Shown here: positions 37,036-43,409 of the stretch, piece after piece | How positions within the stretch are numbered: the first letter of the stretch is position 1 | How the letters are laid out: every line of letters begins with the position of its first letter | Source: Paramoeba atlantica | Lineage: Eukaryota; Protista; Discosea | Assembly: GCA_977017575.1 (NCBI GenBank) | Contig: CDRNVI010000093.1 | Span: 29,571-93,570 of the forward strand | Length of the DNA stretch: 64,000 nucleotides | Direction: 5' to 3' | Notes under the pieces: generated by a model | Told to the model about the DNA's origin: nothing | Databases searched by the model: none | Seen by the model: only the letters and a program-made list of their open reading frames with translations | Made by a program: the position numbers and the translations under genes

Positions 37036-38805
37036 TTATGATATACACGCCGTGACCGATGCTCGAGTGTGAAGAAATGTGAGGGAATCTCCTAAGCCTC
37101 CGGAAACAAGCGGCCCAATTTGGCCGGGAGTGAACAAACAGCTGGATTTTACTCCTCCGGGGTTAGATATGTGACCCCGATACAACATTTTGTTAATCAC
37201 TGCAGCCCTATCAAGTTTATTTTCGTCTCGATCATCAGCAGGTCCCCCGATCAGGCATCGAATGGCAAGATTCCATTGGCTTGAACAGCTGTGCACATCA
37301 TCCATGCTTTTGTTAGAAAAGGATAACCATAATCTGTTCTCGTTCGTGAATGCCTGTGTAACGTCATCTCTAGCACCTTTGCCACTGGGAGAAATGCTAT
37401 TTTTCTCTTCGACATTGTTTTTTACCCCATGCAGTTGCGCATCAGATTTTACATCCGAATTTTTCCCTCCCTTCGACAGAGAGAAGGGTTCCGCTTGTTT
37501 GCGTGTATCGTTCTTCATTGTTTCCTCAGCTGCATCGCTAGAAATGATAAATCCGTACTGGTCCTTTTTTGCGCGGGACCGAGCAGCTTTCAGGATTTCT
37601 CCCGCCCAGTTGTGAGCGTCTGTTTGCTTTGAAACGGTACCCAAGATAATTCGGGAGCCCGCATTTATGGTTTTGCCGTACGTGGACGGGAGAGGCTGCA
37701 GGCAAAGCACTGAATCGGGTGAACCGGGCATTCTGGACCCCCAGAGGTACTGCGTATGAGAAATGGGATCCAATATTTTCGCGTACACATCTCCTGGAAG
37801 TGCCTCGGGAAAAAGATTCTGTAGTCGTTGGAGGGATGGAATTCCGTCAAGTTCTGCTATCACGGGCATTTCGGAAAACGACGCCGGCATGTTTTCTCCC
37901 GTATTGGATGATGTAAGCACACTTACCAGCTTCGCCTCTGGATCCTCCACGACTTGGGTATCCACCTTCGTAACAATACACTCCACACTCTTCTGGGGAC
38001 TTTCTCCCGTGTCAGACTCCTCTGTGACAGGAGAAGACACATACGGCGGAACCACTGAGACATCCACCTCTACCCCTCCACCCCAAAATCCAACTCCCGC
38101 CACCTCACCACACGACTCTTGCTCCTCCGCACCTTTCTCTCCCTCTTCCCTGGCCCCATTCATCACCCACATCCCGGGTTGGTTCTGAAACGTCGGGACC
38201 AACCCCCCAACACACCTGTGGAACCGCTCACAGTACCGTTCCAACCTTCGCTGTGCCCACCGAACATCACGTTCGGCAATATGCGCGTCACAAAACAGCA
38301 AGGCGGTGGCACTCCCGCCCCCTTCCCGTCCACACGCCGCGACCTCCTGCCACGATCGCAGCGGGACCACACGGGCTCCCGGGAGATGCGCCACAGCGAT
38401 GGACACAAACCCCCCGGCAACGAGCTGACGAGGGGCGACCACGCTAAGTGCAACCATCCCGTTTAAATGGTGAGCCCCCCAGTGGTTGCGCAGACACGAT
38501 CGAAGCGCCCTGTGCGCGTGTCGGGCCTCGTTGTGCTTTGCGCTGACTAGCATGTAGGTGAGATGGGGGACTAAGGAGGTACCAATTTGAAGTTGTGCAC
38601 GTCCCAAGGCGTCCAGCACGGCGTGGGTGATGTCTACCTCCGCGGAGGATGCGAACCCGTAGCGTCGGGGTAGGGTGCGAGGGAGTTCAATTCCAGCGCG
38701 TAGGGTGTGAGGAGTCACATGAAACATGAAGAAAATGGTGACATAGCTTAAAAAAATGAATTCGTTGCAGTGAATATGTGTAGAGTGGAGAATGAGGTGT
38801 AGCAA
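37036..38805 (-). CDS. FIST-domain protein (FBXO22 C-terminal-like); probable start at 38727
   Basis: FIST-like blocks VSIAVAHLPGARV, VGGLVP, VAGVGFWGGGVEVDVSVV, IAELDGIPSLQRL and C-terminal LFTPGQIGP...LHTRASV. Confidence 0.65.
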   Translation of the reverse strand: MLHLILHSTHIHCNEFIFLSYVTIFFMFHVTPHTLRAGIELPRTLPRRYGFASSAEVDITHAVLDALGRAQLQIGTSLVPHLTYMLVSAKHNEARHAHRALRSCLRNHWGAHHLNGMVALSVVAPRQLVAGGFVSIAVAHLPGARVVPLRSWQEVAACGREGGGSATALLFCDAHIAERDVRWAQRRLERYCERFHRCVGGLVPTFQNQPGMWVMNGAREEGEKGAEEQESCGEVAGVGFWGGGVEVDVSVVPPYVSSPVTEESDTGESPQKSVECIVTKVDTQVVEDPEAKLVSVLTSSNTGENMPASFSEMPVIAELDGIPSLQRLQNLFPEALPGDVYAKILDPISHTQYLWGSRMPGSPDSVLCLQPLPSTYGKTINAGSRIILGTVSKQTDAHNWAGEILKAARSRAKKDQYGFIISSDAAEETMKNDTRKQAEPFSLSKGGKNSDVKSDAQLHGVKNNVEEKNSISPSGKGARDDVTQAFTNENRLWLSFSNKSMDDVHSCSSQWNLAIRCLIGGPADDRDENKLDRAAVINKMLYRGHISNPGGVKSSCLFTPGQIGPLVSGGLGDSLTFLHTRASVTACIS

Positions 38806-39034
38806 CTTTTTTTAAGCGCACCACGACAGTGAGCGCTTACGCGCGTTCAAGCACTTGTAAGAAAGTATGAGCTGTTGCACAGCTGTAAATTGTGGTGGTT
38901 GTATAAGTCCCGCTCTACCTCCGATTATTAAGAAGAAGTCAACAAAAACAGTGAAATTATGAAGGGGGACACGGTAATACAGTACAAGAAAAATAAATTA
39001 TTCTTCATCTTTTCGATAATGTTTTCTTTTTTGT

Positions 39035-40701: not shown

Positions 40702-41424
40702 TTAGAAAACTATTGAGTCAGAAAACGGATCCTGTTTTTCACCAAAGTCAATTCGTTGTGGCTCGATGCTTATTTGTTCAAGGAAGCTGTCCGCCCCATA
40801 AATACGAGAAATCCCTTCGGAATCTTTCATCACGTTCTGCACCACGTCGATTTGGAGCAACTTTGGTAGTTCTTTGACGATCAGCTCTTTGAAGTTGTTA
40901 TAGCTCGCGTCTAGTACCCGGAGACTCGTTGGGACAGTATCCACCGTGAGAGTGCCGTGAAAACAGTTTCGAGAGAATGATAACTCTCGCAAAGTATTCG
41001 GAAGCCCGGAGAGAGACAGTGGGCCATGATGGAGATTACTATACATCTCAAGCTTAACTAAGCCGGGAGGAAGGCTATCTAAATCGGTCCGCATCCCTAC
41101 AAGCTCATTATTCCCAATATTAAAGGATCTGACGGATTCTGGAAGTAAATTTAACGCAACAGTCCCTTGCAGGAGTCCGGTAGCGGTTAAACGACTCGAG
41201 CTCCAATCAATGCGCTCTACCTGCAACTGGGCGTCACAGCCTACCCCAGCCCACTCACATGCCATGAAAAATGTGTTCCAGGAGGGTGCCGGGTTCGAAA
41301 CATTTGCGATGACGCGTGAAAGTTGAACCTCCTGGGGAAGAGACATACCCTTTACCTTCCCTAGCCGACGCCGATGAGAATGATCGGAGCACTCACCCGG
41401 AAATGGAATACCGTAGAAGCACAT
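40702..41424 (-). CDS. Short leucine-rich repeat protein with a CEWAGVGC cap; start at 41424 or 41346
   Basis: Repeats LPESVRSFNIGNNEL, LPPGLVKLEMYSNLH, LPNTLRELSFSRNCF and VPTSLRVLDASYNNF. Confidence 0.88.
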   Translation of the reverse strand: MCFYGIPFPGECSDHSHRRRLGKVKGMSLPQEVQLSRVIANVSNPAPSWNTFFMACEWAGVGCDAQLQVERIDWSSSRLTATGLLQGTVALNLLPESVRSFNIGNNELVGMRTDLDSLPPGLVKLEMYSNLHHGPLSLSGLPNTLRELSFSRNCFHGTLTVDTVPTSLRVLDASYNNFKELIVKELPKLLQIDVVQNVMKDSEGISRIYGADSFLEQISIEPQRIDFGEKQDPFSDSIVF

Positions 41425-41440
41425 TTTGTGGAGAAATGTT

Positions 41441-41479
41441 GAAAAGACAAGAAGAAAAGAAGAAAAGACAGAGAAGAAA
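41441..41479 (-). promoter_or_regulatory. Polypyrimidine tract on the sense strand upstream of the LRR gene (putative trans-splicing/polyadenylation signal)
   Basis: The minus strand reads TTTCTTCTCTGTCTTTTCTTCTTTTCTTCTTGTCTTTTC; function is inferred from kinetoplastid biology. Confidence 0.55.
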
Positions 41480-41507
41480 TATGTTGTAAATTCACATATT
41501 ACTAATA

Positions 41508-42477
41508 CAGTGGTTTCAGTTGATCTTGTCCCCCACTCGGAATTTTGAGTTTTTTTTATCCATTTTTGGTCATCTTTGCAGCATTGGAGAGATCTCGTTC
41601 CCCTAGCGAAGAGCTTTGCCGCCTTTTTTTCATAGAGACCCCCTGGTGCCCCCTGGGTCCGAAAAACACTGTTTTTTTAGACGTTTTCTGTGTACACAAC
41701 CTTTTTTTGTCACATTTTCCCGATTTTTTGTACATTTTGAACATGTAAGTACGAGTAATAGTGTTCTAAATTGATAATTTGAAAGCTCTATGTCTAGTAC
41801 CATCCCTATCGCCTAATTTAATATAGTCAACATCTCTACATTATGCAGACCAGACCCTCTAACCCCAAACAGGGGGAGTAGGTACAAGGATGGAATGACA
41901 AAAGAGAAGACAATCCCCCAATATCCCACAAACTGGGGGATATTATACCCATAACTTGGCAAAAGGTGAATTGATAAAATATCGTATTAAACAATTGTCT
42001 TGGCCAGCGAATTCGCCTGATTTAAATCCAATAGAAAATGTTTGGAAACAAATGAACGGCATCATAAAGAAAAAAATTAAGCCCCACAATCATGCTACCC
42101 TCGCCGATGCCATTAAAAAAGCTTTTCAGATTCTAAAACGTCCTCAAGAAAAACGTAAAGTGTGCAACACAAGTGATTCAGTCCCTAATAGACTTCAAAA
42201 AGTGTTTTCCGGATACTAGTTCTTTTCCTTCAGAGTTAACTTTTGGACATAAAATCCGTTTTTTGTTCCAATTTTTGATATGATAAAAAAATGTCATTTT
42301 TTTTTATTTTGGTCAACTTTCGGGTCACCCAGGGGGCACCAGGGGGTCTCTATGAAAAAAAGGCGGCAAAGCTCTTCGCTAGGGGAACGAGGTCTCTCCA
42401 ATGCTGCAAAGATGAGCAAAAATGGATAAAAAAAATCAAAATTCCGAGGGGGGGGGCAAGATCAACTGAAACCACTG
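41508..42477 (+). mobile_element. Internally deleted Tc1/mariner DNA transposon (970 bp): 151-bp TIRs, TA target-site duplication, transposase remnant
   Basis: TA|CAGTGGTTTCAGTTGATCTTG... (41508-41658) and ...CAAGATCAACTGAAACCACTG|TA (42327-42477), with about 5 mismatches between the TIRs. Confidence 0.95.
41956..42219 (+). pseudogene. Tc1-family DDE transposase C-terminal fragment
   Basis: LSWPANSPDLNPIENVWKQM is the Tc1 WPxxSPDLNPIENxW signature; DSVPNRLQKV resembles the terminal SMPxRLxxV block. There is no ATG start or N-terminal domain. Confidence 0.92.
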
Positions 42478-42584
42478 TATTTCCCTAAAAGCCATAAGAA
42501 AGTGAGTATGCAACAGTCAGTTGATTATCCATACAAAGGTGCAAGTGGCTGGCAGCCTTTTCTTTTCTTTGTTGAGTTGAATGA

Positions 42585-43409
42585 CTACATCCGGCGTCTT
42601 GGCAGGTGTGCGTCATAATTGAGTACTAGCTCAAGAGCATCTTGGCCAGACTCAAAATAACGCGGAATCAGCCTTCTGATTTTGAAGTTTTTACTCTCGT
42701 AGAATCTGACAAGCCACATCATAGACGGTTCGTTCACCACATGAAGCCTTGCTTTGTCGCAACCAAAATATTTCGCCAGGAGATGAAATAAGTCCAATGC
42801 TTTGGTTCCAATACCCCTTAAGCGGAACACTGGAGAGACTGCGAGAAACGCAAGATATAATTCTGTCCTTGTATGGAGTGGATTTAGAGGACGCAGGGCT
42901 ACGGCGAAGTGAACGATCGGAGCTGCACTTTCCTCGCATGATGTCCTATCTTCTTTTTGGGGAGAAATAAATCCAAGGAAGTGCACAAAACCAGAAGAGT
43001 GAAGAAAATCATCGCAAACCTTTTGTCTTACTACCTCTACTGTTCCCTGACTTGCGTTACACGTCACAAGGCTGCTGCAAGGATGGTTGCAAACAATTTC
43101 TGAATTGGGGAATTGAAAGCTAGATTTCTTTGGGCGTGAATCATTGCTTTTATACCAATCGTATATGAAATCTGATTCCACTGATTTCCAGAAGTACGAC
43201 GAGTTCAAGTCGCACACCTTACAAGCACACGAAAGGTCATCGCTTAATGAACGTTCGCAATATCCGGTTCTAATAAAATGAAAATCATGGGTACCCGGTG
43301 GAGTACTGCAATTTAAGGTATACGTGCTGAGAGTGTGGACGTTTTCATGTTCATGTTGCAGGAAGCATTTCCATGCTAAATGTTTTCCTTCAATGTCACG
43401 GACGTTCAT
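42585..43409 (-). CDS. GNAT-family N-acetyltransferase (NAT/RimI-like C-terminal domain)
   Basis: LYLAFLAVSPVFRLRGIGTKAL, LHV..., FYESKNFKIRRLIPRYFESGQDALEL. Confidence 0.85.
   Translation of the reverse strand: MNVRDIEGKHLAWKCFLQHEHENVHTLSTYTLNCSTPPGTHDFHFIRTGYCERSLSDDLSCACKVCDLNSSYFWKSVESDFIYDWYKSNDSRPKKSSFQFPNSEIVCNHPCSSLVTCNASQGTVEVVRQKVCDDFLHSSGFVHFLGFISPQKEDRTSCEESAAPIVHFAVALRPLNPLHTRTELYLAFLAVSPVFRLRGIGTKALDLFHLLAKYFGCDKARLHVVNEPSMMWLVRFYESKNFKIRRLIPRYFESGQDALELVLNYDAHLPRRRM

What the first reader, a model, noticed from the sequence alone, without database searches (positions are those of the whole stretch)
41506..42479. Well-preserved Tc1/mariner (class II) transposon relic in an apparent kinetoplastid genome
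Seen: TA-CAGTGG...CCACTG-TA ends, 151-bp TIRs with about 5 mismatches, and an internal WPANSPDLNPIENVW transposase fragment on the strand opposite all genes. Known: this motif and TA duplication define Tc1-type DDE elements, while the T. brucei, T. cruzi and L. major genomes are described as carrying retroelements (ingi/L1Tc, SLACS/CZAR, VIPER) rather than DNA transposons. Inference: the near-identical TIRs suggest fairly recent activity. If the genome is an amoeba endosymbiont such as Perkinsela, horizontal acquisition from the host or its environment is plausible.
Basis: partly seen in the sequence, partly recalled or inferred. Interest (0 to 1): 0.78.

Follow-up and report, generated by a model that had tools for sequence, protein, structure and literature searches.

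The report
Deleted Tc1-like transposon in Perkinsela-like kinetoplastid
This 970-letter stretch is a gutted copy of a cut-and-paste jumping gene whose complete copies sit elsewhere in the same genome, that of a trypanosome relative tied to the amoeba Paramoeba atlantica; trypanosome relatives (kinetoplastids) were thought to have almost no such elements.

Summary
Window 41508-42477 is a 970-bp element with 151-bp inverted ends (96% alike), flanked by TA on both sides. It keeps only a C-terminal transposase remnant, on the strand opposite all genes.

It is not an isolated relic. It is an internally deleted, non-autonomous copy of a family whose full-length members are about 1,740 bp and encode a 382-aa transposase. 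The deletion removed residues ~31-286. The family's end sequence occurs 105 times in this 45.7-Mb genome, against 0 for a control. 27 of 33 copies have TA on both sides. One 756-bp copy is present on one haplotype and cleanly absent, with a single TA, on the other, so the family moved recently.

The genome holds at least eight related subfamilies, six sampled with complete reading frames. They form one deep clade with DD32E spacing of the catalytic residues (typical relatives have DD34E). Nothing elsewhere is more than ~27% identical.

The host is a prokinetoplastid. Its HSP90 is 99% identical to a Paramoeba atlantica holobiont transcript and 80% to Perkinsela.

Recent transfer from the amoeba host is not supported. 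Searchable literature reports only Merlin relics as kinetoplastid DNA transposons. This scan already noted Tc1-type elements on other DNA of this genome (s1-403581, s1-403658, s1-403800).

The parts
41506..41507 (.). Left TA target-site duplication
   Evidence: Read directly. 27 of 33 family copies have TA on both sides. The empty allele of another copy has a single TA.
41508..42477 (+). The whole non-autonomous element, 970 bp. It matches the full-length reference at positions 1-425 and 1194-1740.
   Evidence: blastn against the 1,740-bp copy in L031 gives 97.4% over 1-425 and 94.2% over 1194-1740. In a tree of copies it sits with the full-length ones, at path length 0.026 from L031.
41508..41658 (+). 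Left terminal inverted repeat, 151 nt
   Evidence: The end 21-mer is identical to that of the full-length copies.
41843..41932 (+). Remnant of transposase codons 1-30, with an in-frame stop (GEY has become GE*)
   Evidence: tblastn with the family A transposase, the sequence itself and the reference ORF.
41933..41946 (+). 14-bp filler at the deletion junction. Reference positions 426-1193 are missing, which removes residues ~31-286 including catalytic D184 and D283.
   Evidence: Gap between the two blastn segments. Catalytic positions come from alignment A1.
41947..42216 (+). Remnant of transposase residues 287-382, 90.6% identical. It keeps the SPDLNPIEN motif with the third catalytic residue, E316.
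42327..42477 (-). Right terminal inverted repeat, 151 nt
42478..42479 (.). Right TA target-site duplication
40702..41424 (-). Flanking host gene downstream in the gene array: a small LRR protein. Its upstream pyrimidine-rich tract (41435-41480, - strand) lies outside the element and is intact.
42585..43409 (-). Flanking host gene upstream in the gene array: a GNAT acetyltransferase. Its stop codon is 105 nt from the element's right-hand TA (42478-42479).

Best explanation
Window 41508-42477 is a non-autonomous, internally deleted copy of a Tc1/IS630-type cut-and-paste DNA transposon.

The family lives in the nuclear genome of a Perkinsela-like prokinetoplastid linked to the Paramoeba atlantica holobiont. 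A full-length element is about 1,740 bp. It has 151-bp inverted ends and a 382-aa transposase with two N-terminal helix-turn-helix domains and an RNase H-like catalytic domain (D184, D283, E316; spacing DD32E).

The window copy lost 768 bp, covering residues ~31-286 and two of the three catalytic residues. The loss probably came from abortive gap repair. A 14-bp filler marks the junction.

The copy landed at a TA in the 1,160-bp spacer between two genes of a one-directional gene array, antisense to the array and just upstream of the next gene's pyrimidine tract.

It cannot make transposase. Both ends are intact, so transposase from a full-length copy could still move it in trans.

Shown here: the anatomy, family membership, the deletion, TA duplication, recent mobility of the family, the transposase fold and the host lineage. 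Inferred: the gap-repair origin, current mobility of this particular copy, and any effect on processing of the neighbouring genes' RNA.
For: - Ends and TA.
- Deletion map against the full-length copy.
- Complete 382-aa reading frames at C12, C2 and C211. Only the C12 copy keeps every invariant residue. C2 has D283G and C211 has L312S.
- Domains: Pfam DDE_3 with HTH_23 and HTH_Tnp_Tc3_2.
- Catalytic residues: SB100X (5cr4) aligns D/D/E at E 2e-6. D184, D283 and E316 are conserved in 25 sequences.
- Fold: AlphaFold2 mean pLDDT 83.7. Foldseek finds Mos1 at E 1e-10, the Sleeping Beauty catalytic domain at TM 0.73 and SETMAR at TM 0.77.
- Copy number: the 21-nt end sequence has 105 hits against 0 for the control. 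Size classes are about 1,724-1,743, 728-790, 966-970, 1,185 and 225 bp.
- Mobility: C66:159848-160603 is filled, while the C44 allele (98.7-99.6% identical flanks) is empty and reads CAGCCCCTCA-TA-TGTTTGAGGA.
- Not an assembly error: the same insertion lies on a second contig, C53, 99.94% identical over 7 kb.
- Host: together with PMC5601477 and PMC7859406.
Against: - No transcript or protein evidence for the transposase was found. The top protein-database hits come only from ENA assemblies, none from the MMETSP/EukProt transcriptome.
- The window copy is present on both haplotype contigs and has ~1.5% private divergence, so it may be immobile now.
- Only one family A copy keeps all invariant residues, and its activity is untested.
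- Assigning the contigs to the endosymbiont nucleus, rather than to a co-cultured kinetoplastid, rests on sequence similarity only.
Confidence: 0.9

Rival explanations
1. The element, or its family, reached the endosymbiont recently by horizontal transfer from the host amoeba or the environment.
For: - The endosymbiont ingests host cytoplasm (PMC5601477), so DNA could reach it.
- Tc1-like elements spread horizontally in many lineages (established knowledge).
- A Tc1-like gene is reported in Bodo saltans virus (PMC11544213).
Against: - Ten sampled transposases from eight subfamilies of this genome (30-78% identical) form one clade with SH-aLRT 100 on a 0.84 branch, apart from 94 outside sequences. 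This pattern fits old residence and diversification in place.
- The best outside matches are 24-27% identical in 5.8 billion proteins.
- In JGI metagenomes the best are 22-25% identical, and IMG/VR has none.
- The host amoeba's nuclear genome could not be searched.
Confidence: 0.08
2. Assembly artefact or contaminant: foreign DNA wrongly joined into a kinetoplastid contig.
For: The source culture is a mixture of organisms (PMC4870792).
Against: - The identical insertion with identical flanks lies on two contigs.
- The family is on more than 50 contigs, which also carry the spliced-leader motif.
- TA duplications are precise.
- A filled/empty allele pair exists.
Confidence: 0.01
3. The copy has been co-opted. 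Each inverted end carries an inward-facing pyrimidine tract followed by AG (TTTTTTTTATCCATTTTTGCTCATCTTTGCAG). On the transcribed strand this could act as a trans-splicing and polyadenylation signal for the neighbouring GNAT and LRR genes.
For: - The motif is seen in the sequence.
- In kinetoplastids, pyrimidine tracts direct both processing steps (established knowledge).
- The copy is kept on both haplotype contigs.
Against: - There is no RNA evidence.
- The LRR gene keeps its own pyrimidine tract outside the element.
- Fixation in the spacer can be neutral.
Confidence: 0.1

Closest known systems
Tc1 / Sleeping Beauty (Tc1 family, DD34E, of the IS630-Tc1-mariner superfamily)
   Same: - TA target duplication and ends that begin CAGTG.
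- Long inverted ends.
- Two N-terminal HTH domains with Pfam HTH_Tnp_Tc3_2 and DDE_3.
- The WPxxSPDLNPIEN motif and a C-terminus ending in G..GY.
- The catalytic domain superposes on SB100X at TM 0.73.
   Different: - 32 rather than 34 residues lie between the second D and the E, a 2-residue deletion shared by seven of the eight aligned subfamilies of this genome's clade. Subfamily F has 29.
- There is an extra segment between the first and second D.
- Identity to outside Tc1-like proteins is at most 27%.
- No internal direct-repeat binding sites were found in the inverted ends.
Bacterial IS630 family (NCBIfam NF033545)
   Same: The full-length profile match covers positions 2-296 of 299, and the DDE spacing falls within the IS630 range.
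   Different: - The score of 89.6 bits is below the curated cut-off of 100.
- The setting is a eukaryotic nucleus.
- The 151-bp inverted ends are far longer than typical IS630 ends (the comparison is from established knowledge).
Merlin sequences of Perkinsela sp. and Bodo saltans (Lopes et al. 2021, PMC8101967)
   Same: DNA-transposon-derived sequence in early-branching kinetoplastids. [quoted passage not shown]
   Different: - Merlin is a different superfamily (DDE_Tnp_IS1595).
- It has few, divergent copies. The Perkinsela copies have no inverted ends or target duplications, and it was judged inactive.
- Here there are dozens of copies with intact ends, TA duplications, complete reading frames and an insertion polymorphism.
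Non-autonomous deletion derivatives and MITEs of Tc1/mariner elements
   Same: Internal deletion with both ends kept, a filler at the junction, and many short copies alongside a few full-length ones.
   Different: The window copy's breakpoints (425/1194) are seen only at this locus. The common 728-790-bp class has right-hand breakpoints at about 1364-1498.

Membership tests
IS630-Tc1-mariner superfamily | TA target-site duplication | tested here: met
   TA flanks the window copy on both sides. 27 of 33 copies have TA on both sides. The empty allele has a single TA.
IS630-Tc1-mariner superfamily | Terminal inverted repeats | tested here: met
   151-nt ends, 96% alike in the window copy and 97% in the full-length copy.
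IS630-Tc1-mariner superfamily | Transposase with an RNase H-like DDE/D catalytic domain and N-terminal paired-like HTH domains | tested here: met
   Met for the family's full-length copy: Pfam, SB100X alignment, invariant D184/D283 and E316 conserved in 24 of 25 sequences, AlphaFold2 model with Foldseek hits to Mos1, SB and SETMAR. The window copy keeps only residues 1-30 and 287-382.
IS630-Tc1-mariner superfamily | Cut-and-paste mobility | tested here: inconclusive
   A filled/empty allele pair shows a clean insertion. Excision and enzyme activity were not tested, and no excision footprint was looked for.
Tc1 family in the strict sense (DD34E) | 34 residues between the second D and the E | tested here: not met
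   D283 to E316 gives 32 residues. The 17 outside relatives in A1 have 34, and subfamily F has 29.
mariner (DD34D) | Third catalytic residue is D; Pfam Transposase_1 | tested here: not met
   The third residue is E316. Pfam reports DDE_3, not Transposase_1.
pogo / Tigger (DDxD; DDE_1 with a CENP-B-type N-terminus) | Pfam DDE_1 domain and a third catalytic D | tested here: not met
   No DDE_1 hit, and the third residue is E.
Bacterial IS630 (NF033545 equivalog) | Score at or above the curated cut-off of 100 bits | tested here: not met
   89.6, 73.6 and 83.8 bits for three subfamilies.
Kinetoplastea, Prokinetoplastina (host assignment) | Spliced-leader sequence, one-directional intron-poor gene arrays, and closest relatives among prokinetoplastids | tested here: met
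   - The CAGTTTCTGTAC-type motif has 204 dispersed hits against 0 for the control, like the SL fragments reported across the Perkinsela genome (PMC5601477).
- All 23 long ORFs in the window are on one strand.
- The best named hit for succinyl-CoA ligase beta is PhM-4, Papus ankaliazontas, at 62%.
- HSP90 is 80% identical to Perkinsela and 99% to EP00008_Paramoeba_atlantica_P001689.

The most novel reading that the evidence does not exclude
The Perkinsela-like kinetoplastid of Paramoeba atlantica carries a lineage-specific, currently active radiation of Tc1/IS630-type transposons, a 'DD32E' clade. These would be the first mobile class II elements documented in Kinetoplastea. They may be expressed through a trans-splice acceptor (a pyrimidine tract followed by AG) built into each inverted end, which would fit a cut-and-paste transposon to a genome without gene-specific promoters.
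Probability: 0.3. Interest if true: 0.75.

Novelty: new member of a known kind. Interest (0 to 1): 0.58.

Why it matters
Kinetoplastid genomes are usually described as carrying only retroelements. A 2025 survey of 57 trypanosomatid genomes found no DNA transposons (PMC12278014). The only earlier report for the wider group is of inactive Merlin remnants (PMC8101967).

A diverse set of Tc1-like elements with complete reading frames and an insertion polymorphism, in an early-branching kinetoplastid, would change that picture in several ways:
- It suggests that class II elements were lost in the trypanosomatid line, not that they were absent from the whole group.
- It raises the question of how a transposase gets expressed where transcription runs through whole gene arrays and mRNAs are made by trans-splicing.
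- It bears on why this endosymbiont-type genome (45.7 Mb assembled, with haplotype duplicates) is so much larger than the 9.5-Mb Perkinsela genome.
- It could provide a native transposon tool for kinetoplastids.

The window element itself is an ordinary deletion derivative. The interest lies in the family and its host.

Tried and rejected
- The listing of cluster members gave no accession numbers for the transposase clusters.
- An Rfam scan of the window found nothing.
- The phrase search 'tc1 mariner' gave a false zero because papers write the name with a slash. It was redone with separate words.
Orientation bias therefore remains untested.
- No internal direct-repeat structure was found inside the inverted ends.
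- The 262-aa ORF in the 2.3-kb insert of the C51 copy has no Pfam match.
- 'DD32E' is not used as a family name in the searchable papers.
- The exhaustive protein search (search of protein representatives) was not run. The word search, metagenome scan and viral scan already bounded outside relatives, and that library carries no names.
- Rejected readings: mariner, pogo, bacterial IS630, assembly artefact, lone relic.

Full report
**1. The observation**

The sequence at 41506-42479 reads TA|CAGTGGTTTCAG...CTGAAACCACTG|TA. The element proper is 41508-42477, 970 bp.

The repeat finder reports inverted arms of 155 nt, 92% complementary without gaps. With gaps allowed, the two 151-nt ends are 96% alike.

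An 87-aa ORF on the + strand (41956-42219) carries WPANSPDLNPIENVW. It hits Pfam DDE_3 above the curated cut-off.

All 23 ORFs of at least 350 aa in the window are on the - strand, so the remnant is antisense to the gene array.

**2. What the element is**

The left end, used as a query against the window's own assembly (G000: 45.7 Mb, 248 contigs; the window is C93:29571-93570), found dozens of copies at 94-100% identity. The end 21-mer has 105 matches with up to 2 mismatches, against 0 for the reversed control.

Pairing the ends gives these size classes:
- about 1,724-1,743 bp
- a dominant 728-790-bp class
- 966-970 bp
- 1,185 bp
- a 225-bp copy made of little more than the ends
- 2.8-kb and 3.4-kb copies that carry nested inserts

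The 1.74-kb copies encode a 382-aa protein.

Against the C12 full-length copy, the window copy matches positions 1-425 (97.4%) and positions 1194-1740 (94.2%), with a 14-bp filler between them. The missing 768 bp cover transposase residues ~31-286. The N-terminal remnant also has an in-frame stop.

So the window copy is a non-autonomous deletion derivative. In a tree of the shared end regions it groups with the full-length copies. It lies at path length 0.026 from the C12 copy and has a private branch of 0.015.

**3. The transposase**

- Domains: Pfam finds DDE_3, HTH_23/28/29 and, more weakly, HTH_Tnp_Tc3_2.
- Catalytic residues: phmmer against PDB sequences finds the Sleeping Beauty SB100X catalytic domain at E 2e-6, with the three catalytic positions aligned.
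- Conservation: in a 25-sequence alignment, D184 and D283 are invariant and E316 is conserved in 24 of 25 sequences.
- Spacing: the distance from D283 to E316 is 32 residues. The outside relatives have 34. Seven of the eight aligned subfamilies of this genome share the 2-residue deletion, and subfamily F has 29.
- Fold: the AlphaFold2 model has mean pLDDT 83.7. Foldseek finds full-length Mos1 at E 1e-10, the SB catalytic domain at TM 0.73, SETMAR at TM 0.77 and the Mos1 catalytic domain at TM 0.78.
- IS630 comparison: NCBIfam's IS630 model matches end to end, but at 89.6 bits it is below its 100-bit cut-off.

The protein belongs to the Tc1/IS630 branch of the superfamily. It is not mariner (the third residue is E), not pogo (no DDE_1 domain), and not Tc1 in the strict DD34E sense.

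**4. Mobility**

27 of 33 extracted copies have TA on both sides. Five of the rest differ by one base from TA on one side, and one by two bases.

The assembly holds two or more near-identical versions of most loci, which look like haplotype contigs. The window locus recurs on C53 at 99.94% identity over 7 kb, insertion included. This rules out a mis-join.

For the 756-bp copy at C66:159848-160603, the matching locus on C44 has flanks 98.7-99.6% identical but lacks exactly the element. It reads ...CAGCCCCTCA-TA-TGTTTGAGGA... with a single TA. This is a clean presence/absence polymorphism, so the family inserted after the two haplotypes diverged.

Among the three family A copies with complete reading frames, only C12 keeps every invariant residue. 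C2, its allele, has D283G. C211 has L312S.

**5. A wider population**

A protein search of the genome gave 1,018 first-look candidates. Of these 108 were scored, giving 112 matches, at 98-100%, 74%, 58%, 47-49% and 31-38% identity, many without internal stops.

Representatives of six further subfamilies have complete reading frames. Four of them were checked for ends. They have 84-165-nt inverted ends, and three of them (subfamilies B, D and E) start with TA|CA at both ends; subfamily C's ends were not resolved. The three scanned against Pfam show the same domain layout.

In a maximum-likelihood tree, the ten sampled proteins of this genome form one clade with SH-aLRT 100 on a branch of 0.84. 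They are separate from 94 outside Tc1/IS630-like proteins.

Outside the genome:
- In about 5.8 billion proteins, the best matches are 24-27% identical. The 48-100% hits are ENA gene calls that match this genome's own subfamilies.
- A scan of JGI metagenomes with clade-specific motifs found three loci at 22-25%.
- IMG/VR had none.

This pattern fits long residence and diversification in this lineage. It does not fit a recent arrival.

**6. The host**

- The kinetoplastid spliced-leader core, as the variant CAGTTTCTGTACCTTGTTGGT, occurs 204 times, dispersed over most large contigs, against 0 for the control. [quoted passage not shown]
- HSP90 lies in tandem arrays with a 2,587-bp period.
- The window's succinyl-CoA ligase beta is 62% identical to the EukProt sequence of clone PhM-4. 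It is also 62% identical to a gene call on what appears, from its matching length, to be a Perkinsela sp. CCAP 1560/4 contig. It is 53% identical to the T. brucei protein. PhM-4 is Papus ankaliazontas, a free-living prokinetoplastid (PMC7859406).
- The HSP90 protein is 99% identical to EukProt EP00008_Paramoeba_atlantica_P001689 (MMETSP0151) and 80% to Perkinsela sp. CCAP 1560/4. Paramoeba transcriptomes mix host and endosymbiont RNA (PMC4870792).

The genome is therefore most likely that of the Perkinsela-like endosymbiont of P. atlantica or a very close relative. At 45.7 Mb, with haplotype duplicates, it is several times the 9.5 Mb of the published Perkinsela genome.

**7. Local context and likely behaviour**

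The element fills 974 of the 1,160 bp between the GNAT gene (42585-43409, - strand) and the small LRR gene (40702-41424, - strand). It leaves the LRR gene's upstream pyrimidine tract untouched.

The copy cannot make transposase. Its ends are intact, and the end 21-mer is identical to that of the full-length copies. Movement in trans is therefore plausible but not shown.

Each inverted end holds an inward-facing pyrimidine tract followed by AG. I raise, as inference only, that this could serve as a trans-splice acceptor. In sense-oriented full-length copies it would serve the transposase. Here it would create a cryptic RNA-processing site.

**8. Literature**

- Lopes et al. [quoted passage not shown] The Perkinsela copies lack inverted ends and target duplications (PMC8101967).
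- A 2025 survey of 57 trypanosomatid genomes found no DNA transposons (PMC12278014).
- The Perkinsela genome paper mentions only retroelements.
- No paper in the searchable library links Tc1 or mariner elements natively to kinetoplastids.
- That the foreign mariner Mos1 can transpose in Leishmania is from my own knowledge, not from a paper read here.

**9. Earlier notes of this scan**

Another agent (s1-403581) reported Tc1, pogo, Harbinger and Merlin elements in this genome and named the same host. Two first-reader notes (s1-403658, s1-403800) flag Tc1/mariner copies elsewhere. I reached the host and the family independently and tested the Tc1 part only.

**10. Limits**

- The amoeba's own nuclear genome and other kinetoplastid assemblies could not be searched.
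- There is no expression evidence.
- The exhaustive protein search was not used.

**Verdict**

This is a real, ordinary-in-mechanism, non-autonomous Tc1-like transposon. Its interest lies in the family it belongs to: a deep, lineage-specific and recently mobile set of DD32E elements, in a group of organisms thought to lack active DNA transposons.

Noticed in passing
L068:1317-2390 (G000:C26:466358-467431); the same insert is in L069 (C59): A 1,074-bp element is nested inside a Tc1-like copy. It has perfect 20-nt inverted ends, CAGGGTTCGCAGAAACTATA, and an 8-bp target duplication, TTTTGTTT. Its end sequence has 97 genome-wide matches against 0 for the control. Sizes are about 950, about 1,074 and 1.8-3.8 kb. 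This looks like a separate, very uniform DNA-transposon family, hAT-like judging by the 8-bp duplication and CAGGG ends.
   Followed up: partly
L070:683-3062 (G000:C51) and L071 (C60): A 2.3-kb insert lies in another Tc1-like copy. Its inverted ends start AAACCGGGGGTCAG, and it has a 262-aa ORF with no Pfam match.
   Followed up: partly
G000:C93:6410-7426 (same contig, upstream of the window; L078:899-2020): A complete 373-aa transposase of a different subfamily (34% identical) lies in an element of about 1.56 kb with 106-nt inverted ends and TA|CAGGGGTG termini.
   Followed up: partly
window 38000-38900: A GC-rich patch (GC 0.57-0.64) sits inside the 589-aa ORF at 37036-38805. Its GC skew flips from -0.45 to +0.27. 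It resembles the 'GC islands with skew flip' noted elsewhere in this genome (s1-381636, s1-399893).
   Followed up: no
whole genome G000: The spliced-leader-like motif CAGTTTCTGTACCTTGTTGGT is dispersed over most large contigs, with 204 hits, and not confined to one tandem array.
   Followed up: no
G000:C12:348-14803, C48:751-12619, C88:130590-147632, C90:145000-169423: HSP90 genes lie in tandem arrays with a 2,587-bp period on four contigs, which suggests two array loci with two haplotypes each.
   Followed up: no
G000:C149 (205094, 326185, 429643, 512306) and C143, C161, C170, C172, C177: 18S rRNA genes of about 2.1 kb lie singly, roughly 80-120 kb apart on C149, not in a tight rDNA array.
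   Followed up: no
L023:2261-2710 (G000:C211): A 149-aa ORF ending ...KKGYHIGY looks like a deletion derivative of yet another Tc1-like subfamily. It lies next to the full-length family A copy.
   Followed up: no
L054 (G000:C51:125959-126720) versus L058 (C60:117620-118585): Copies at the same insertion site on two haplotypes differ in length, 762 against 966 bp, because of an internal duplication in one of them.
   Followed up: partly
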